Part shown: in pieces, positions 5,057-55,611 of the stretch
Numbering within the stretch: the stretch's first letter is position 1
How the letters are laid out: each line of letters begins with the position of its first letter
Assembly: GCF_023055435.1 (NCBI RefSeq)
Contig: NW_025964013.1
Location: forward strand, 5,518,001 to 5,582,000
Origin: Haliotis rufescens
Taxonomy: Eukaryota
Reading direction: 5' to 3'
Length of the DNA: 64,000 nt
Program-made: the position numbers and the translations under genes
Notes under the pieces: generated by a model
The model's input: the letters and a program-made list of their open reading frames with translations, nothing else
What the model was told of the DNA's origin: nothing
Database searches by the model: none

Positions 5057-5769
5057 ACTGAAAAAGTTAAAAATACCAATAAATTTAAGACCACGCGAGC
5101 AGGCGTTGATGATGTCAACTGTTTGGTGTGACACCACGTCCTGCTACACCTGTACCGTGTCTTAAAGTGTGACCTTACATCAGTGTTAACTGGTTTCAAT
5201 GAGTCGATGTCTAATTCTACGGTTCGTTAAGTTTAGATTTGATGATAATGCGTTTGGATGACGTTCAAGTCCCGATGGCGCCGATGACTGAACGAGGCAG
5301 AGACGAGGATCACCCAACTCGTATCTTCTCAATAGTTGTCGCTGATCCCCAGGCGCTTGTGTGTACTAGAACGAATTCTGTTCATTTTCAGTACCATTTA
5401 CACATCTGTAATATTCAATAAAAAGAAACAGGTGCTTACCTTTTGTGTTATAATCAAGCATTGAAGGTACCGGAGAAAGCCGGACTCAGTCAGTTGGTAA
5501 ACGTGACGTGCCTCTCAAACGTGCTATGCGGGGTTACTGTATATGTGTAATTCGTATCCCTCGTTAAGCATCGCCTCGGTACATTACAAACATTCATGTC
5601 ACAATCAACTCGAAATCCACAGTAAATCACAACGTACAGTGTTTTATGACGAAAGCACTATTATAGTAGTTGTTTATAAAACCATAAATACTCATGTGCG
5701 TCGTAGTGAAAATTACATTGTCTAAATCTGTTGGATTTTGTTAAATGGAAATAATAACGTCAATATTTT

Positions 5770-6257
5770 GTAGTACAGATGATATTGGCGTCAACGGTTT
5801 CCAGTACAGATAATGTTGACTGTCAATGTTTTCTTGTACAGATACTATGGACCGTTAATGTTTTCTTGTACAGATAATATAGACCGTTAATGATATCTAG
5901 TACAGATAATATAGACCGTTAATGTTATCTAGTACAGATAATATAGACCGTTAATGTTATCTAGTACAGATAATAAAGACCGTCAGTCTTTTCTTTTACA
6001 GATAATATGGACCGTCAGTGGTATCTTACAGAGATACTTTGGACCGTCAATGTTTTCTCGTACAGATAATATGGACAATCCATGTTTTCTAGTACATATG
6101 ATATAGACCGTCAATGTTTTCTCGTACAGATAATATGGACAATCCATGTTTTCTAGTACATATAATATAGACCGTCAATGTTTCCAGTACAGATACTATG
6201 GACCGTCAGTGTGTTCTTGTACAGATAGTATGGACTGTCAATGTTTTATTGTACAGA
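5770..6257. repeat. Minisatellite, 32-bp unit (gtacagataatatagaccgttaatgttatcta)
   Basis: gtacaga recurs every 32 nt (e.g. 5900, 5932). Confidence 0.9.
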
Positions 6258-6974: not shown

Positions 6975-8180
6975 ATTTGCAACATCTGTGTACACTGTAT
7001 ACATACCTCTATAAGCTACCTGTAGATGTAACAACATCTCTGTTAATTAACTGTATCTGTTACAACATCTCTATAAACTATCTGTAGATGTAACAACATC
7101 TCTGTTAACTAACTGTATATGTTACACAATCTCTAAAGACTACCTGTATATGTTACAACATCTCTATAAACTACCTGTAGATGTAACAACATCTTTGTTA
7201 ACTAACTGTATATGTTACAACATCTCTATAAACTACCTGTAGATATAACAACATCTTTGTTAACTAACTGTATATGTTACAACATCTCTATAAACTACCT
7301 GTAGATGTAACAACATCTTTGTTAACTAACTGTATATGTTACAACATCTCTATAAACTACCTGTAGATGTAACAACATCTTTGTTAACTAATTGCATTAT
7401 GTTACAAAATCGCTATTAACTACCTGTATATGTAACAACATCTCTATAAAGTACAAGTGTATGTACAATCTCTATAAACTACGTGTATGTGTTACAACAT
7501 CTCTATAACCTCCCTGTATATGTTAAAACATCTCTATAACCTCCCTGTATATGTTACAACATCACTATAACCTCCTTGTATATGTTACAACATATCTATA
7601 ACCTCTCTGTATATGTTAAAACATCTCTTTAACCTCCCTATATATGTTACAACATCTCTATAACCTCCCTGTATATGTTACAACATCTCTATAACCTCTC
7701 TGTATATGTTAAAACATCTCTTTAACCTCCCTATATATGTTACAACATCTCTATAACCTCCCTGTATATGTTACAACATCTCTATAACCTCCCTGTATAT
7801 GTTACAACATCTCTATAACCTCCCTGTATATGTTACAACATCTCTATAACCTCCCTGTATATGTTACAACATCTCTATAACCTCCCTATATATGTTACAA
7901 CATCTCTATAACCTCCCTGTATATGTTACAACATCTCTATAACCTCCTTGTATATGTTACAACATCTCTATAACCTCCCTGTATATGTTAAAACATCTCT
8001 TTAACCTCCCTATATATGTTACAACATCTCTATAACCTCCCTGTATATGTTACAACATCTCTTTAACCTCCTTGTATATGTTACAACATCTCTATAACCT
8101 CCCTGTATATGTTAAAACATCTCTTTAACCTCCCTATATATGTTACAACATCTCTATAAACTACCTGCAGGTGTTACATA
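6975..8180. repeat. Minisatellite, 31-bp unit (tgttacaacatctctataacctccctgtata), with a 62-bp dimeric left part
   Basis: Period is 31 (7801, 7832); variants alternate at 7010-7400. Confidence 0.95.
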
Positions 8181-9094
8181 GTTATAACCACACTATGTAT
8201 TGCGTTGACATATGCCGATTTATGGACATGTTTATTTTTGAAATGATGTTTTCAATGTGGTTTGTGTGGGGTCATCTTTAGCCGAGCTGATCATTACTCA
8301 CGTATGTTTATTGCCGTTTCTCATAATCTGTTCTACGGTGACCTTGCCCTTCTTTTCAAGGCGTTGCCAGCAATGTCCAAGCGTTCGAGAAACATTAACG
8401 TCATAGATGATGAAACCGATTTTCCTTTATGAACCGCCAGACAGTCCTATGACAGTAAATAAGAGCGACCAAACCATACAATCCACACCAAAATAGGAAC
8501 TTTTCCGACTATTTGATAAGAATGAGTTTACAGACCGCCGTCATATAGCTAAAATATTGCTGAGCGCGGCGTTAAAAAACCAACCAACCAACAACCAACT
8601 AAGTGGAGGATGTATCATCACCCCGTTTAATTAAATTACAGTTACAGAATTCAAACCGTCAACGTCAGATACAATCCGACTCGGATATCCTATTTTTAAC
8701 TCTCTGCCTGCAATGTCTATTGATGTTTAGAATAATCTGTCACATGTCATTACGTGGTTATATTGATTTCCCATTTCGAAAATGACAAGGACAGACAGAC
8801 TCTTGCTCAAAATATTTTTTGGTCGGGGTTATAGCGTACAATGCCCCAATATAGCTTTCAAAAGGATACGCTCAAATATATTCGAAAACATGTTGTCATC
8901 ACTGTTTGATAGTGATTCATAAACACATGTTCATGATATAGTCGGAATCGTACCATCGACTTTGCCTTTGACTGAGATTTCTATGAATATGGACAAGGGG
9001 CTTTGTCACTTATATTTACGTACAGAGTTGTTGTTTTCAGTATCACACAGTGCTGACGGCGTCGCCACTGTAGACTCGAATACGTGGCTTCAAA

Positions 9095-10112
9095 CCAACA
9101 TGTTTCTTGTAAGTTCCTCAGTCCGCACACTTTACCAACATGTTTCTTGTAAGTTCCTCAGTCCGCCCACTTTACCAACATGTTTCTTGTAAGTTCCTCA
9201 GTCCGCCCACTTTACCAACATGTTTCTTGTAAGTTCCTCAGTCCGCCCACTGTACCAACATGTTTCTTGTAAGTTCCTCAATCCGCCCACTTTACCAACA
9301 TGTTTCTTGTAAGCTACTCAGCCCACTCACTTTACCTTGTAAGTTCCTCAGTCCGCACACTTTACCAACATGTTTCTTGTAAGTTCCTCAGTCCGCCCAC
9401 TTTACCAACATGTTTCTTGTAAGTTCCTCAGTCCGCCCACTTTACCAACATGTTTCTTGTAAGTTCCTCAGTCCGCCCACTGTACCAACATGTTTCTTGT
9501 AAGTTCCTCAATCCGCCCACTTTACCAACATGTTTCTTGCAAGCTACTCAGCCCACTCACTTTACCAACATGTTTCTTGTAAGCTACTCAGTCCACTCAC
9601 TTTGCCAACATGTTCCTTGTACATTCCCCAGCACACTCACTTTACCAACACGTTTCTTGTACATTCCCCAGTCCACTCACTTTACCAACATGTTTCTTGT
9701 ACATTCCCCAGTCCACCCACTTTACCAACATGTACCTCGTACATTCCCCAGCCCACTCACTTTACTAACATGTTCCTTGTACATTCACCAGCCCACTCAC
9801 TTTACCAACATGTTCCTTGTACATTCCCCAGTCCACTCACTTTGCCAACATGTTCCTTGTACATTCCACAGTCCACTAACTTTACCAACATGTTCCTTGT
9901 GCATTCCCCAGTCCACCCACTTTACCAACATGTATCTGAAACAGGCCCCAGCCCACTCACTTTGCCAACATGTTCCTTGTACATTCCCAAGCCCACTCAC
10001 TTTACCAACACGTTTCTTGTAAGTTCCTTAGTCCACTCACTTTGCCAACATGTTTCTTGTACATCCTCAAGTCCACTCACTTTGCCAACATGTTACCACT
10101 TCACTTTACCAA
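9095..10112. repeat. Minisatellite, 40-bp unit (tttaccaacatgtttcttgtaagttcctcagtccgcccac)
   Basis: Exact 40-nt periodicity with a left-to-right variant gradient. Confidence 0.95.
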
Positions 10113-20412: not shown

Positions 20413-20957
20413 CTGTCAACGCGCATGTTGACGGGGAATTAGCTCTCGGGGGAATAAAGGCAAAAAATCGACATCACTGTCAACTGCACAACATCACTGC
20501 ACAACATGTGAACAATAAACAACAATTGTACATTGAGCGGAATACCTGCTCTGACAACACAAACAAGGCGATGTGCGGACCTTCCAGCTCAGGCATACAT
20601 GAGGTGAGCGGAGCTCCAGCTCAACCTCAGGACGTTTCCTACGAGCGGCACATCCTGATCGAGGTCGTCCTTACACCCATGTCCGGATTCCAAGCTTGAC
20701 TAACACCATATAATAATAACACATATATAGAACAACAATATATATAATGAACAACAATGGACAGACAAAGAGACAACGACGTTGCTTTGGACATTGGACA
20801 TATGGGCGTGATTAACCGACACAGTTAGGGGAAGATCAATTAGGGCAATAAATGTCATACTATAAAAAGCAGTAGTTAAAGGGAAGTGATATGGTAGTCC
20901 AGGCTGACTGACAGTCACAATACAATGAAATGTTGGTGAAGATTAACACCGGGGATT
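20413..20957 (+). repeat. Left arm of a ~540-bp long inverted repeat (partner 23648-24172)
   Basis: tgtcaacgcgcatgttgacggggaattagctc...aatgaaatgttggtgaagattaaca is the diverged reverse complement of 23648-24172. Confidence 0.85.
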
Positions 20958-23647: not shown

Positions 23648-24172
23648 AATACCCGTTGTTAATCCTCACCAACATTTCATTGTATATTGACTGAGAGCCA
23701 AACTGGGCTACTTTATCACTTCCCGTTAATTACTGTTATTTATAGTATGACATTTATTGCCTTAATTGTTCATCCCCTGAGTTGTGTCGGTACGTCGCCC
23801 CCGGAAGTCCCATGTCCAGAGCAACGTTATTGTATTTCCATTGTTCAGTACTATATATGTGCTACCATTACACAGTTACTACGGTGTTAGTCAGGCTTGG
23901 TATTCCGAGTGCTGGTGTAGGGACGACCTCGAGCAGGATGTGCCGCTCGTAGAAAACGCCCTGAGGTTAGCTGGAGCTCCGCTCACCTCTTGTACACCTA
24001 AGCTGGAAGGTCCGCTCATCCATGTGTTGGTGTTGTCAGAGCAGGTATTCCGCTCATTGTGCAATTGTTGTTTATTGTTTACATGTTGTGCATAAAGCGT
24101 TCCGGGACAGTGATGTCGATTTTGTCCTTTATTCCCCCAAGAGCTAATTCCCCGTCAACATGCGCGTTGACA
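23648..24172 (-). repeat. Right arm of the long inverted repeat
   Basis: Ends ...ccccgtcaacatgcgcgttgaca, the reverse complement of the 20413 start. Confidence 0.85.
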
Positions 24173-37470: not shown

Positions 37471-38739
37471 ATCCAGTTATCGTTCTCAACTCCCTGGGGA
37501 GTATGCACACCTGTGCAGTCAGTCGGGTGCTAGACATTTGCACGCAAATCACCATCTCTTGCCTGCGTGGACGCCTCGCTATCAACACCGTCACCACGTG
37601 ACCATCATGTGACAGGAAGTTACTAAACGGTTTGATGTGAGGTTCCTATCAACAGAGTTAGGAACGTCATGATGACATTGCTTCATCAACATAACTGCTG
37701 ATCAATCAAACACGGCTTCACTTCCACAGCTAAATGTGCTCAGTGATGTGTGGATTCCAGAAGCGTGAGGGTATCTTGGATTACTGCTTGTTTAGCTGGA
37801 CATAATCCAACATGAGATTGCACATATTGTACCCATGTGGGGAATAGAACCCGGCCCGCGAACGCTTTAACCTTCAGGCTACCCTACCGCCAATCACGAA
37901 GTGAAGACAAAACACAAATTGCTGGAACATCAGTTTATTTACATTTAGGTATAGGAAGGAGAAGAATCTATATCCAACTGATATGTAACATTTTGTGTAC
38001 AACCGTGATAATTGATAATTGTGCATACTATTAATATTGACAGTACCTTCGCAGAGAATCTTAACTAAACTGTTACCAAGGGCAACTGATGCCCTGTTAA
38101 CCATTATAATCGATCTACCACACACAGGGGTTGAACTTGGATTCCCCTCCATACCAAGACACTATTTCACCGAGTTCCGTATGCAGTGGAGATGTTGCGA
38201 CGTCCGCTAAAATATAAAAACAAAACTGTGTCTGAAATTACGCTGGTGGTAAGTCATGGATTGTTGTATACCTACTTGATTGGGCACAAAGGGCCCATGT
38301 CGTGGCGTCAGGCAATAAATACTTACATTTCTATGCAAATTGTTTGAATGGCGGATGCTTACCCTTTTCGGTAGCACCAGTGGTCATCCCTAATTTTCAA
38401 TTGTTCATTCATATAATTTTCAAATGGAATCTGTTTCGTTGGATAATCCGGTTATTCTCTTGCATTGACAATTTATATTTGTGAACTAATTGAATTACTC
38501 TATATGGGCATCAACATATTGGTGTTAAATTTACTGGCAAAGCCATAAATACTCTATAAGTCGTTGTTTAACATGGCGCTATTTCAGCTGTCTGAATTGT
38601 TTGAACTGATACACTGATGCAAGTATTGTTTAGATAATGTGTTGAAACAGAAACAGTTCTATCCAATTTACGAAAGGAATGTGTTTGCCGGCATCACAAT
38701 TATGTAAACATTTGCAATAAGGTCTGAGGCTTACCTGTA

Positions 38740-39781
38740 TTAACCTGAACAGCAGGTATACGAGCCCACATAGTCTGCAACAAGAAGATTGTCACATTTC
38801 GCCGCCAGCGTCCCAGTACTACACAGTGAAGCCACTAGGTCGCTGCGGACACATCGTTGCGTGCACCCAGTTACTGAAATCAAGATAAAAAACAATTCAA
38901 TAAACACCAGTATGCATTCAACATTCTCACTGTAAGACTTCTACCTCTCAAAGGAACACTTCTCTATTGTGAAATACCTACAGGCCTACAGTTCTAAATA
39001 AGTGTCATGAAACCAAAACCATTTATAAGATTATATTTGAGATTATGACCTGTCTTATTGCACCACACCAAGGCTCTTAATATCATTACACGTGGAACAA
39101 ATACTAGTGTATCGAAGACCGACCCAACACAAACGTCTCCACGTTTCTAAGGACTCAAACCATCTGACATAATGTCTACATGTACAGCATTGATATCAAG
39201 GGAAAGGAAAGGTTCATACAGAAGGTTTTATCCGCGACTGTCGGCATTGTTGATTCTGCTGGTGGTGGGGTCGGTGGTGCTGTGGTCGGTGGTGGGGTCG
39301 GTGGTGCTGTGGTCGGTGGTGGAGTCGGTGGTGCTGTGGTCGGTGGTGGGGTCGGTGGTGCTGTTGTCGGTGGTGGAGTCGGTGGTGCTGTGGTCGGTGG
39401 TGGGGTCGGTGGTGCTGTTGTCGGTGGTGGGGTCGGTGGTGCTGTGGTCGGTGGTGGGGTCGGTGGTGCTGTGGTCGGTGGTGGAGTCGGTGGTGCTGTG
39501 GTCGGCTCTGGTTCCTTTGATTTGGGTTTCCTTGATTTGGGTTTCCTTGATTTTGGATTCCTTGACCATGGTTTCCTTGGTCCTCGTGTCTGCTTCCCGG
39601 GGTTTCGGACTGGTGCGGGTCCTGACGCTTGGTTGACTTGACAGTAGTCAGAATAGTACTTTTTAGCCAGTGTACACATGAAGTTAATATCGTATTTGTC
39701 GACGTATGTCGGACGTCCATGCGAGTACGATAGTTGGACTGAGCACGCGAACAGCAGGAGAACAAGCACGAAGGACGCCAT
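38740..39781 (-). CDS. Secreted Pro/Thr-rich, cationic-repeat, 6-Cys-domain protein, copy A (231 aa); exons 39781-39220 and 38873-38740
   Basis: Signal peptide MASFVLVLLLFACSVQLSYS; donor TCT|GTATGA; acceptor ATTTCAG|. The phase-1 join yields LTGCTQRCVRSDLVASLCSTGTLAAKCDNLLVADYVGSYTCCSG-stop. Contains 9 PTTAPPTPP units. Confidence 0.82.
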
Positions 39782-39801: not shown

Positions 39802-39834
39802 AGTGATATTCTCCTGTCGACATTCTCTTTTATA
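39802..39834 (-). promoter_or_regulatory. TATA box plus Inr core promoter of the secreted-protein gene
   Basis: TATAAAAG (39834-39827) lies exactly 30 nt upstream of the A in TCACT (39804). The TATA box is conserved in all three units. Confidence 0.7.
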
Positions 39835-46398: not shown

Positions 46399-47426
46399 TT
46401 AACCTGAACAGCAGGTATACGAGCCCACATAGTCTGCAACAAGAAGATTGTCACATTTCGTCGCCAGCGTCCCAGTACTACACAGTGAAGCGACTAGGTC
46501 GCTGCGGACACATCGTTGTGTGCACCCAGTTACTGAAATCAAGATAAAAAACAATTCAATAAACACCAGTATGCATTCAACATTCTCACTGTAAGACTTC
46601 TACCTCTCAAAGGAACACTTCTCTATTGTGAAATACCTACAGGCCTACAGTTCTAAATAAGTGTCATGAAACCAAAACTCAGTGTGATACCATGCATGTC
46701 CAAATGAGCTGCCATTTATAAGATTATATTTGAGATTATGACCTGTCTTATTGCACAACACCAAGGCTCTTAATATCATTACACGTGGAACAAATACTAG
46801 TGTATCGAAGACCGACCCAACACAAACGTCTCCACGTTTCTATGGACTCAAACCATCTGACATAATGTCTACATGTACAGCATTGATATCAAGGGAAAGG
46901 AAAGGTTCATACAGAAGGTTTTATCCGCGACTGTCGGCATTGTTGATTCTGCTGGTGGTGGGGTCGGTGGTGCTGTGGTTGGTGGTGGAGTCGGTGGTGC
47001 TGTGGTCGGTGGTGGAGTCGGTGGTGCTGTGGTCGGTGGTGGGGTCGGTGGTGCTGTGGTCGGTGCTGGGGTCGGTGGTGCTGTGGTCGGTGCTGGTGGA
47101 GTCGGTGGTGCTGTGGTCGGTGGTGGTGGGGTCGGTGGTGCTGTGGTCGGCTCTGGTTCCTTTGATTTGGGTTTCCTTGATTTGGGTTTCCTTGATTTTG
47201 GATTCCTTGACCATGGTTTCCTTGGTCCTCGTGTCTGCTTCCCGGGGTTTCGGACTGGTGCGGGTCCTGACGCTTGGTTGACTTGACAGTAGTCAGAATA
47301 GTACTTTTTAGCCAGTGTACACATGAAGTTAATATCGTATTTGTCGACGTATGTCGGACGTCCATGAGAGTACGATAGTTGGACTGAGCACGCGAACAGC
47401 AGGAGAACAAGCACGAAGGACGCCAT
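46399..47426 (-). CDS. Secreted Pro/Thr-rich 6-Cys protein, copy B (215 aa); exons 47426-46913 and 46532-46399
   Basis: Same splice sites and intact frame; 7 Pro/Thr units; all cysteines conserved. Confidence 0.8.
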
Positions 47427-54066: not shown

Positions 54067-55611
54067 TTAACCTGAACAGCAGGTATACGAGCCCACATAC
54101 TCTGCAACTAGAAGATTGTCACATTTCGTCGCCAGCGTCCCAGTACCACACAGTGAAGCCACTAGGTCGCTGCGGACACATCGTTGTGTGCACCCAGTTA
54201 CTGAAATCAAGATAAAAAACAATTCATTTAACACCAGTATGCATTCAACATTCTCACTGTAAGACTTCTACCTCTCAAAGGAACACTTCTCTATTGTGAA
54301 ATACCTACAGGCCTACAATTCTAAATAAGTGTCATGAAACCAAAACTCAGTGTGATACCATGCATGTCCAAATGAGCTGCCATTTATAAGATTATATTTG
54401 AGATTATGACCTGTCTTATTGCACCACACCAAGGCTCTTAATATCATTACACGTGGAACAAATACTAGTGTATGGAAGACCGACCCAACACAAACGTCTC
54501 CACGTTTCTAAGGACTCAAACCATCTGACATAATGTCTACATGTACAGCATTGATATCAAGGGAAAGGAAAGGTTCATACAGAAGGTTTTATCCGCGACT
54601 GTCGGCATTGTTGATTCTGCTGGTGGTGGGGTCGGTGGTGCTGTGGTTGGTGGTGGGGTCGGTGGTGCTGTGGTCGGTGGTGGAGTCGGTGGTGCTGTGG
54701 TCGGTGGTGGGGTCGGTGGTGCTGTGGTCGGTGGTGGAGTCGGTGGTGCTGTGGTCGGTGGTGGGGTGGGTGGTGCTGTGGTCGGTGGTGGGGTCGGTGG
54801 TGCTGTGGTCGGTGGTGGGGTCGGTGGTGCTGTGGTCGGTGGTGGAGTCGGTGGTGCTGTGGTCGGTGGTGGAGTCGGTGGTGCTGTGGTCGGCGGTGGG
54901 GTCGGTGGTGCTGTGGTCGGTGCTGGTGGAGTCGGTGGTGCTGTGGTCGGTGGTGGGGTCGGTGGTGCTGTGGTCGGTGGTGGAGTCGGTGGTGCTGTGG
55001 TCGGTGGTGGGGTCGGTGGTGCTGTGGTCGGTGCTGGGGTCGGTGGTGCAGTGGTCGGTCGTGGTGGAGTCGGTGGTGCTGTGGTCGGTGGTGCTGGGGT
55101 CGGTGGTGCTGTGGTCGGAGGTGGTGGGGTCGGTGGTGCTGTGGTCGGATGTGCTGGGGTCGGTGATGCTGTGGTCCTTGATTTGGGTTTCCTTGATTTG
55201 GGTTTCCTTGATTTGCGTCTCCTTGATTTGGGTTTCCTTGATTTGGGATTCCTTGATTTGGGTTTCCTTGATTTGGGTTTCCTCGATTTTGGATTCCTTG
55301 ATTTGGGTTTCCTTGATTTGGGATTCCTTGATTCGGGATTCCTTGATTTGGGATTCCTTGATTTGGGTTTCCTTGATTTGGGTTTCCTTGATTTGGGATT
55401 CCTTGACCATGGTTTCCTTGGTCCTCGTGTCTGCTTCCCGGGGTTTCGGACTGGTGCGGGTCCTGACGCTTGGTTGACTTGACAGTAGTCAGAATAGTAC
55501 TGTTTAGCCAGGGTACACATCGTATTTGTCGACGTATGTCGGACGTCCATGCGAGTACGATAGTTGGACTGAGCACGCGAACAGCAGGAGAACAAGCACG
55601 AAGGACGCCAT
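54067..55611 (-). pseudogene. Secreted Pro/Thr-rich 6-Cys protein, copy C; frameshifted by an 11-nt deletion; exons 55611-54581 and 54200-54067
   Basis: gaagttaatat is missing at about 55520 relative to A and B, giving ...VDKYDVYPG-stop (TAA 55506-55504). The downstream frame is open, with 15 basic pentapeptides, 20 Pro/Thr units and an intact Cys exon. Confidence 0.75.

What the first reader, a model, noticed from the sequence alone, without database searches (positions are those of the whole stretch)
38740..39781. Modular secreted protein with a hidden 6-Cys C-terminal domain on a mucin-like stalk and a polycationic repeat
Seen: splicing at canonical sites replaces the ORF-track tail with a 44-aa exon, C-x3-C-x9-C-x8-C-x13-CC-S-G-stop. 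The full architecture is signal peptide, C-x10-C loop, (K/N)PKSR repeats, (PTTAPPTPP)n, then the 6-Cys domain. Established: six Cys ending in CC is the beta-defensin/big-defensin-type arrangement (the spacing here differs), a terminal Gly is the PAM amidation signal, and Pro/Thr repeats are O-glycosylated stalks. Inference: an uncharacterised family of mucosal-defence, adhesive or shell-matrix proteins. I do not recognise it as a named protein.
Basis: partly seen in the sequence, partly recalled or inferred. Interest (0 to 1): 0.85.

Follow-up and report, generated by a model that had tools for sequence, protein, structure and literature searches.

The report
Abalone secreted mucin-like six-cysteine family
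This is a real red-abalone gene, already predicted in the public annotation under a misleading name, for a small secreted sugar-coated protein whose conserved six-cysteine tail marks a 20-copy gene family found so far only in abalones and never studied.

Summary
On the minus strand, exon 1 (39781-39220) joins exon 2 (38873-38740) across a GT..AG phase-1 intron. The product has a signal peptide, a C-x10-C loop, 4.7 basic 5-aa repeats, 9 PTTAPPTPP repeats and a 43-aa tail, C-x3-C-x9-C-x8-C-x13-CC-S-G-stop.

The exon is not hidden from annotation. RefSeq protein XP_048236513/4 of Haliotis rufescens (231 aa, "vegetative cell wall protein gp1-like") is exactly this model.

The Cys exon occurs 20 times in this genome, in three clusters. 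All six Cys and the final Gly are invariant. The phase-1 intron sits at the same codon in 19 of 20 copies. A second splice donor 5 nt after the stop is conserved in all 20, so the gene probably has a third, untranslated exon.

A profile search of 1.84 billion proteins found the domain only in Haliotis, always at the C-terminus, behind three different N-terminal modules. There is no Pfam, PDB-sequence or literature match.

The only fold matches are two beta-defensin-fold peptides, and they are weak (Z 2.2). The domain is neutral to acidic, and the defensin HMMs miss it.

The function is inferred: an O-glycosylated mucus, coat or glue-type protein. I obtained no RNA evidence. The scan's two earlier notes concern this same window.

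The parts
39827..39834 (-). TATAAAAG box, 46-53 nt upstream of the ATG
   Evidence: Read directly. The same box precedes unit 3.
39220..39781 (-). Exon 1 coding part: 187 codons plus the first base of a split Leu codon. It encodes the signal peptide, the C-x10-C loop, the basic repeat and the Pro/Thr repeat.
   Evidence: Translation. Identical to residues 1-187 of RefSeq model P0009.
39716..39781 (-). Signal peptide, about 22 residues with a hydrophobic core FVLVLLLFA. The cleavage site is inferred.
   Evidence: The homologous N-termini of all family members are aligned. No SignalP run was available.
39641..39676 (-). C-x10-C loop (Cys36..Cys47). It is homologous to the last Cys pair of the large helical N-domain of the long subfamily.
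   Evidence: FMCTLAKKYYSDYCQV here against FMCKLAENFYSNCCQV in P0010.
39509..39579 (-). Polycationic (K/N)PKSR repeat, 15 nt x 4.7 copies. The basic block, residues 53-91, has net charge +13.
   Evidence: TRF; charge. Unit 3 has 15.5 copies.
39261..39505 (-). PTTAPPTPP repeat, 27 nt x 9.1 copies. The 85-residue block holds 46 Pro and 27 Thr and is a putative O-glycosylated stalk.
   Evidence: TRF; composition. Units 2 and 3 have 7.0 and 20 copies.
38874..39219 (-). Intron 1: 346 nt, GT..AG, phase 1
   Evidence: The same position and phase occur in 19 of 20 paralogs, with intron lengths of 342-911 nt. The RefSeq model uses it.
38740..38873 (-). Exon 2 coding part: the last two bases of the Leu codon, the 43-aa six-Cys domain and the stop TAA
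38729..38739 (-). TACAG|GTAAGC: a consensus splice donor 5 nt after the stop, conserved in all 20 paralogs
   Evidence: Similarity to the distant C334 paralogs stops here. Its use in RNA has not been shown.
37915..38206 (-). Candidate untranslated third exon. A polypyrimidine tract and AG lie at 38208-38207, and AATAAA lies at 37939-37934. The limits are approximate and inferred.
   Evidence: The block starting at the AATAAA aligns with the matching place of paralog L006.
46399..47426 (-). Tandem unit 2: an intact paralog of 215 aa = RefSeq XP_048236515.1. Exon 2 lies at 46399-46532.
54067..55611 (-). Tandem unit 3: a paralog with much expanded repeats whose signal peptide is out of frame with the body. 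Exon 2 at 54067-54200 is intact.

Best explanation
Shown: this is a real gene of the red abalone (Haliotis rufescens). It has two coding exons and probably a third, untranslated one. It encodes a 231-aa secreted modular protein, and the public annotation already predicts it under a name taken from its proline-rich repeat. It belongs to a family of at least 20 genes in three tandem clusters, found so far only in abalones. The family is defined by one cassette: the last residues of the preceding exon (P-x-V-A-x-K-T-F) followed by a 43-aa exon with six invariant Cys and an invariant final Gly. That cassette sits behind three unrelated N-terminal modules, always across a Pro/Thr- or Thr-rich linker of variable length. 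The type in this window nests with the long type on a tree of the tail. It appears to have lost most of the helical Cys-rich N-domain and gained a polycationic repeat. It is seen only in H. rufescens and H. cracherodii. Inferred mechanism: these are abundantly secreted, heavily O-glycosylated extracellular proteins of a mucus, surface coat or glue. The stiff glycosylated stalk would act as a spacer or hydrated brush. The disulfide-knotted tail, possibly C-terminally amidated, would be the common docking end for a shared partner. The N-terminal module would set the second specificity; here that is a +13 block that would stick electrostatically to polyanions such as sulfated glycans, biofilmed or mineral surfaces, or microbial envelopes.
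For: Gene structure and coding status come, and from identity with RefSeq P0009. Family size and conservation: 20 exon copies with six Cys and the terminal Gly invariant, and dN/dS of 0.3-0.5 between subfamilies. Cassette behaviour: similarity to distant paralogs is confined to exon 2 plus both splice sites, a donor after the stop is conserved in all 20 copies, and the same tail follows three different N-modules. Taxon range: a profile search against 1.84 billion proteins gave five true clusters, all Haliotis, and two further searches returned only Haliotis relatives. Derived origin of the window type: tree (support 91/93 and 99/99), plus the shared signal peptide and last Cys loop. Secreted mucin-like character: the hydrophobic N-terminus, a linker of 46 Pro and 27 Thr in 85 residues, repeat numbers that differ between paralogs at 9.1/7.0/20 and 4.7/4.7/15.5, a TATA box, and arrays of up to 11 nearly identical genes, at least nine of them with an intact exon 1. 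Mature proteins have an even number of Cys, which fits closed intramolecular knots.
Against: I have no expression, tissue or protein evidence. O-glycosylation, amidation and any binding partner are inferences. The AlphaFold models are mediocre: pLDDT 67 for the domain alone and 70-78 for it in the full-length context. No VWD, CTCK or other mucin-assembly domain is present, so these proteins are not gel-forming mucins. Nothing excludes a role in shell, periostracum, egg coat or radula.
Confidence: 0.5

Rival explanations
1. The tail is a highly diverged beta-defensin or big-defensin-type (trans-defensin) domain, and the proteins are mucosal antimicrobial effectors. In the window type the polycationic repeat would do the killing or the tethering to microbes.
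For: The domain has six Cys ending in a CC dyad. The model places that dyad in the last strand (residues 38-41; CC is 40-41). Of 48,161 PDB chains, only two reach Z 2 or more, and both are beta-defensin-fold peptides: 1b8w platypus DLP-1 and 6qet AvBD11 second domain, at Z 2.2, rmsd 2.0-2.3 A over 32 residues. The domain sits on its own exon behind a phase-1 intron, as I recall for beta-defensins and big defensins; that recollection is my own knowledge and was not tested here. The basic block carries +13. There is a hint of dN above dS among the young C334 paralogs, but each comparison rests on only a few changes.
Against: The Cys spacing is outside the defensin ranges. Pfam Defensin_beta and Defensin_big give nothing on the domain at E up to 10, and genome-wide they hit none of the 20 exons. 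The domain's net charge is 0 to -4. It is the most conserved part of the proteins, not the most variable. Z 2.2 on a pLDDT-67 model is within noise, and AlphaFold may simply follow the Cys pattern. Two of the three subfamilies have no cationic block.
Confidence: 0.12
2. These are shell-matrix, periostracum or other hard-part proteins secreted by the mantle. The basic block and the knot would bind mineral or chitin.
For: Lineage-restricted, repetitive, tandemly amplified secreted genes are typical of molluscan mantle secretomes, which is the theme of PMC1676022 and PMC5400390 as listed. Basic Lys-rich matrix proteins are known in molluscs (my own knowledge).
Against: A motif search of the supplementary sequence files of the H. 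laevigata nacre and prism proteome found no family member, though that file was cut when stored. The 14 H. asinina shell proteins described in PMC2989941 do not include a protein of this kind. There is no Pfam chitin-binding match.
Confidence: 0.15
3. The protein is a precursor. The conserved C-terminal knot would be cut off and released as an amidated, disulfide-rich peptide such as a pheromone, hormone or toxin-like signal. The rest would be a carrier.
For: The terminal Gly is invariant in every copy, as in amidated molluscan peptides. A Lys is nearly invariant five residues before the first Cys, and it is Arg-Lys in the C334 type.
Against: There is no conserved dibasic site. The Lys is absent in H. 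asinina P0013. The residues around the putative cut (K-T-F-L-T) are themselves conserved as part of the module. A long glycosylated stalk with variable repeat number is not typical of propeptides.
Confidence: 0.08
4. It is not a functional gene: a chance ORF plus chance splice sites, or a dead copy.
For: One of the three units in the window is frameshifted.
Against: Twenty conserved copies, conserved splice sites, intact orthologs or paralogs in four Haliotis species, dN below dS between subfamilies, and an identical RefSeq model.
Confidence: 0.02

Closest known systems
Drosophila salivary glue protein Sgs-3 and similar small secreted mucin-type glues (my own knowledge; RefSeq's automatic name for family members P0001 and P0015 is 'salivary glue protein Sgs-3-like')
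   Same: Both are small secreted proteins with a signal peptide, a central Thr/Pro-rich tandem repeat of variable copy number and a short Cys-rich end. Both are encoded by clustered paralogs.
   Different: There is no sequence relationship outside the low-complexity repeat. The six-Cys tail matches no Pfam family. The automatic name rests on composition only.
Lubricin / PRG4 (my own knowledge)
   Same: Both have a Pro/Thr repeat of the KEPAPTTP kind between two end domains. In lubricin the ends anchor a hydrated brush to a surface, which makes it a functional analogy for a stalk with sticky ends.
   Different: Lubricin is far larger and has somatomedin-B and hemopexin end domains, which are absent here. 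The similarity is an analogy, not homology.
[quoted passage not shown]
   Same: Both have six Cys ending in CC, a small domain of about 40 aa carried on its own exon, and the only fold matches found, which are weak.
   Different: The spacing is C-x3-C-x9-C-x8-C-x13-CC. The domain is neutral or acidic. There is no HMM match. It is fused to a mucin-like stalk and is the most conserved part of the protein rather than the most variable.
Plant GASA/snakin ('gibberellin-regulated protein 14-like') and Chlamydomonas GP1 ('vegetative cell wall protein gp1-like'), the automatic RefSeq names of the genes in this window
   Same: Only the proline-rich composition is shared.
   Different: There is no GASA 12-Cys domain and no Pfam match at all. 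The names are composition artefacts and should not be taken as function.

Membership tests
Beta-defensin / big-defensin C-domain (trans-defensin) | Six Cys with a terminal CC dyad | tested here: met
   The pattern is invariant in 11 distinct paralog sequences and in 12 public proteins.
Beta-defensin / big-defensin C-domain (trans-defensin) | Canonical Cys spacing: about C-x6-C-x3-4-C-x9-14-C-x4-6-CC (my own knowledge) | tested here: not met
   Here the spacing is C-x3-C-x9-C-x8-C-x13-CC.
Beta-defensin / big-defensin C-domain (trans-defensin) | Match to the family HMMs (Pfam PF00711 Defensin_beta, PF14862 Defensin_big) | tested here: not met
   There is no Pfam hit at E up to 10 on the domain. 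Genome-wide scans with both HMMs hit none of the 20 exons.
Beta-defensin / big-defensin C-domain (trans-defensin) | Beta-defensin fold (three-stranded sheet, CC in the last strand) | tested here: inconclusive
   The AlphaFold model has pLDDT 67 and strand-helix-strand-strand order. Foldseek found nothing. The wide VIA search gave only 1b8w and 6qet, both beta-defensin fold, at Z 2.2.
Beta-defensin / big-defensin C-domain (trans-defensin) | Cationic mature domain | tested here: not met
   Net charge is 0 for the window type and -3 to -4 for the other types.
Beta-defensin / big-defensin C-domain (trans-defensin) | Disulfide map C1-C5, C2-C4, C3-C6 | not testable with these tools
   No model coordinates were available to me. 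This needs chemistry or NMR.
Gel-forming or secreted mucins | Pro/Thr/Ser-rich tandem-repeat domain of variable copy number | tested here: met
   The linker length differs among family members.
Gel-forming or secreted mucins | VWD, C8, TIL or CTCK assembly domains | tested here: not met
   No Pfam domain was found in four full-length members.
Gel-forming or secreted mucins | Dense O-glycosylation | not testable with these tools
   Inferred from composition only.
C-terminally amidated secretory peptides (PAM substrates) | Gly as the last encoded residue, or Gly followed by basic residues | tested here: met
   Gly-stop is present in all 20 genomic copies and in all public homologs. Actual amidation was not tested.
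GASA/snakin (the RefSeq name of unit 2) | 12-Cys GASA domain (a Pfam family) | tested here: not met
   No Pfam match on window-type proteins. Members have 8 Cys after signal-peptide removal.
Unnamed Haliotis family defined here | C-terminal cassette P-x-V-A-x-K-T-F / phase-1 intron / 43-aa exon with C-x3-C-x9-C-x8-C-x13-CC-x-G-stop, then a donor 5 nt after the stop | tested here: met

The most novel reading that the evidence does not exclude
The 43-aa cassette is an undescribed disulfide-knot domain, possibly an extremely diverged and de-cationised trans-defensin, that arose in or before the abalone lineage. It would have spread by exon shuffling onto at least three different secreted N-terminal modules as a common, probably amidated, docking end. 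The Californian abalones would then have turned one member into a polycationic mucin-like anchor.
Probability: 0.15. Interest if true: 0.6.

Novelty: new variant of a known kind. Interest (0 to 1): 0.4.

Why it matters
Abalones are farmed and several species are endangered. Their mucus, adhesion, shell and mucosal defence depend on secreted proteins that are largely lineage-specific and unnamed. This family is large, at 20 genes, with arrays of up to 11 near-identical copies. It is cleanly defined by one cassette exon, and it currently carries misleading automatic names (plant cell-wall, gibberellin-regulated, fly glue). Naming the domain and finding where it is expressed would correct the annotation. 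It would also give a compact 43-residue domain that could be synthesised for structural work, and a tidy example of exon shuffling and repeat expansion creating new secreted proteins. It is not a surprise of principle, because molluscan genomes hold many such families, as other notes of this scan on the same genome also show.

Tried and rejected

A search for short protein fragments ending in the domain, which might have come from transcript assemblies, found nothing.

These searches gave nothing:
- Pfam on the exons and on four full-length members.
- A PDB sequence profile search, best E 0.41.
- Foldseek against the PDB.
- pdb_via, which had nothing to compare because Foldseek found no chain, so that job was wasted.
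- ESM Atlas on the domain and on the long N-domain.
- A fold search of the full-length long-type model, which gave only generic helical matches at Z 5.3 or below.

Literature searches on accessions, RefSeq names and sequence motifs found nothing; the two motif hits looked unrelated. General searches found no description either. I checked the H. laevigata and H. asinina shell proteome papers without a match.

I rejected the GASA/snakin, GP1 and Sgs-3 names as composition artefacts.

I searched them separately by reference, and for full-length work I used the public protein P0009, which a tool returned.

Full report
**What is in the sequence**

The gene lies on the minus strand. A TATAAAAG box sits at 39834-39827 and the ATG at 39781. 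Exon 1 runs to 39220 and translates to 187 residues. It contains:
- a hydrophobic signal-type N-terminus;
- a C-x10-C loop (Cys36 to Cys47);
- a basic (K/N)PKSR repeat, 15 nt x 4.7 copies at 39509-39579;
- a PTTAPPTPP repeat, 27 nt x 9.1 copies at 39261-39505.

Base 39220 is the first base of a codon. The intron begins with GTATGA at 39219 and ends with TTTCAG at 38874. Exon 2 supplies the other two bases, giving Leu, and then 43 residues with the pattern C-x3-C-x9-C-x8-C-x13-CC-S-G followed by TAA at 38742-38740.

**Is it more than chance?**

A six-frame search of the window's own assembly (1.33 Gb, 615 contigs) with the 43-aa exon found 20 copies in three places:
- four at C235 5.48-5.57 Mb, of which three are in this window and one identical copy lies 79 kb away;
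- eleven at C235 4.04-4.15 Mb;
- five on C334 at 51-54 Mb.

Identity to the window copy ranges from 100% down to 53%. Even so, 22 of 43 positions are invariant, including all six Cys and the final Gly, and every copy ends Gly-stop.

In 19 of the 20 copies a simple pattern search finds ..K-T-F followed by a GT donor upstream, at the same codon and phase. Introns are 342-911 nt long and each exon is preceded by a polypyrimidine tract and AG.

Between subfamilies dN/dS is 0.3-0.5 with dS near 0.7-1.0. DNA similarity to the distant C334 copies begins 0-14 nt before exon 2 and ends 8 nt after the stop. This is a conserved coding exon.

In all 20 copies the stop is followed by TACAG|GTAAG or GTATG (in one copy TAAAG), a consensus splice donor. 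Exon 2 is therefore probably an internal exon, and the transcript would carry a 3'UTR intron.

In this gene a plausible acceptor lies at 38208-38207 and an AATAAA at 37939-37934. The block starting at that AATAAA aligns with the matching place in a paralog of the other C235 cluster. This third exon is an inference.

**Identity of the genome and prior annotation**

I built a profile from 11 distinct paralog exons (A1) and scored it against 1.84 billion representative proteins. It gave eight hits. Three are repeat artefacts. Five are true, and each carries the domain at its extreme C-terminus.

All five are RefSeq models from Haliotis rufescens, H. cracherodii and H. rubra. A further search added H. 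asinina.

P0009 (XP_048236513.1 and XP_048236514.1, H. rufescens, 231 aa, "vegetative cell wall protein gp1-like") is letter for letter exon 1 + Leu + exon 2 of this gene. P0003 (XP_048236515.1, "gibberellin-regulated protein 14-like") is the middle unit of the window.

So the exon is hidden only from an ORF track.

I searched them by reference separately, and I used the public protein id for full-length work.

**Family anatomy**

The conserved module starts before the intron: P-x-V-A-x-K-T-F, then the split Leu (Met in one member), T, and the six-Cys exon. It follows three different fronts:
- (a) The long type has a helical domain of about 150 aa with 12 Cys. This covers the eleven-gene array at 4.04-4.15 Mb and includes P0010, P0012, P0013 and P0014. 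At least nine of the eleven have a complete, intact exon 1.
- (b) The C334 type has another Cys-rich front and Thr-rich repeats (P0001, P0002).
- (c) The window type is the one described above.

The window type shares its signal peptide and its C-x10-C loop with the last Cys pair of the long type's N-domain. It nests with the long type on a tree of the last 56 residues, with support 91/93 and 99/99; the tree is rooted at the midpoint for drawing only. It occurs only in H. rufescens and H. cracherodii.

The simplest history is loss of most of the N-domain and gain of a polycationic repeat in the Californian abalones. Repeat numbers differ freely between the three units of the window, at 9.1/7.0/20 and 4.7/4.7/15.5 copies, and between species.

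**What the domain is**

- Sequence searches gave nothing: no Pfam family at E up to 10, no PDB sequence relative and no ESM Atlas look-alike.
- AlphaFold on the 11-sequence alignment gives a mediocre model with pLDDT 67 and strand-helix-strand-strand order.
- The domain reaches pLDDT 70-78 within a full-length long-type model, which also shows a helical N-domain and a disordered linker.
- Foldseek finds nothing in the PDB.
- An exhaustive comparison with 48,161 chains gives only two at Z 2 or more. Both are beta-defensin-fold peptides: platypus DLP-1 (1b8w) and the second domain of avian AvBD11 (6qet), at Z 2.2 and rmsd 2.0-2.3 A over 32 residues.

Several results count against membership:
- the spacing is different;
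- the Pfam Defensin_beta and Defensin_big models miss all 20 exons in a genome-wide scan;
- the domain's net charge is 0 to -4;
- the domain is the most conserved part of these proteins, whereas the parts in front of it are exchanged.

**How it most likely works**

The steps shown are that the protein is secreted-type, modular, tandemly amplified, variable in repeat number, and built around a conserved knot.

The rest is inferred:
- A linker of 46 Pro and 27 Thr in 85 residues should be densely O-glycosylated and extended.
- Mature proteins have an even number of Cys, so the knot is probably closed on itself and acts as a binding end rather than a cross-linker.
- The invariant final Gly fits C-terminal amidation.
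- The +13 block would bind polyanions.

I therefore read the family as mucus, coat or glue-type glycoproteins with a common docking tail and exchangeable heads. They would be functionally comparable to small mucin-type glues (Sgs-3) or to lubricin-like brushes. My confidence in the whole statement is about 0.5. My confidence in the gene-level part alone is above 0.9.

The rivals are a defensin-like antimicrobial (0.12), a shell or periostracum matrix protein (0.15), a precursor of a released amidated peptide (0.08) and a non-functional locus (0.02).

**Limits**

Literature searches on accessions, automatic names and motifs found nothing. The abalone shell proteome papers I checked do not contain the family, although one supplementary file was truncated.

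The restriction to Haliotis rests on annotated proteomes only. No other mollusc genome could be searched here.

**Verdict**

The gene models are already public, but the domain and the family are undescribed as far as I could find. This is a new variant of a known kind, a small secreted mucin-like protein with a terminal disulfide knot, and it is of moderate interest.

Noticed in passing
window 54067-55611 (minus), especially 55500-55560: In the third tandem unit, exon 1 is 1031 nt long (3n+2 where 3n+1 is needed). It has 11 nt fewer than unit 1 between ..DKYD and MCTLAK.., so the signal peptide is out of frame with the body. The body frame there reads like the H. cracherodii ortholog P0015. 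Its repeats are expanded to 15.5 basic units and 20 Pro/Thr units. It is either a pseudogene or an assembly indel.
   Followed up: partly
L001 (G000:C235:5476361-5479489), 79 kb before the window gene: A fourth copy of the window-type gene has exon 1 and exon 2 translations identical to the gene under study. This may explain why two RefSeq accessions, XP_048236513 and XP_048236514, share one sequence.
   Followed up: partly
L006-L015 (G000:C235:4.07-4.15 Mb): An array of ten near-identical long-type genes, spaced 4-20 kb apart, shows the same two-coding-exon structure. One of them (L006) has a broken exon 1.
   Followed up: partly
L016-L020 (G000:C334:51.2-54.4 Mb): Among the young paralogs of the C334 cluster, non-synonymous changes in the Cys exon outnumber synonymous ones in most pairs (dN/dS about 2-3). 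Each comparison rests on only a few changes, mostly in the loop between Cys4 and the CC dyad. This is a hint of diversifying selection, not a result.
   Followed up: no
window 5758-6257, 7007-8178, 9094-10094: There are three AT-rich minisatellites: 32 nt x 15.7 copies, 31 nt x 37.9 copies and 40 nt x 25.3 copies, with 81-87% matches.
   Followed up: no
window 20414-20957 and 23648-24172: An inverted pair of segments of about 0.5 kb at 81% identity, probably copies of a mobile element.
   Followed up: no
whole genome G000: Pfam Defensin_big and Defensin_beta HMMs find no convincing gene anywhere in this abalone assembly. The best hits are 24-26 bits, and both contain in-frame TGA codons.
   Followed up: partly
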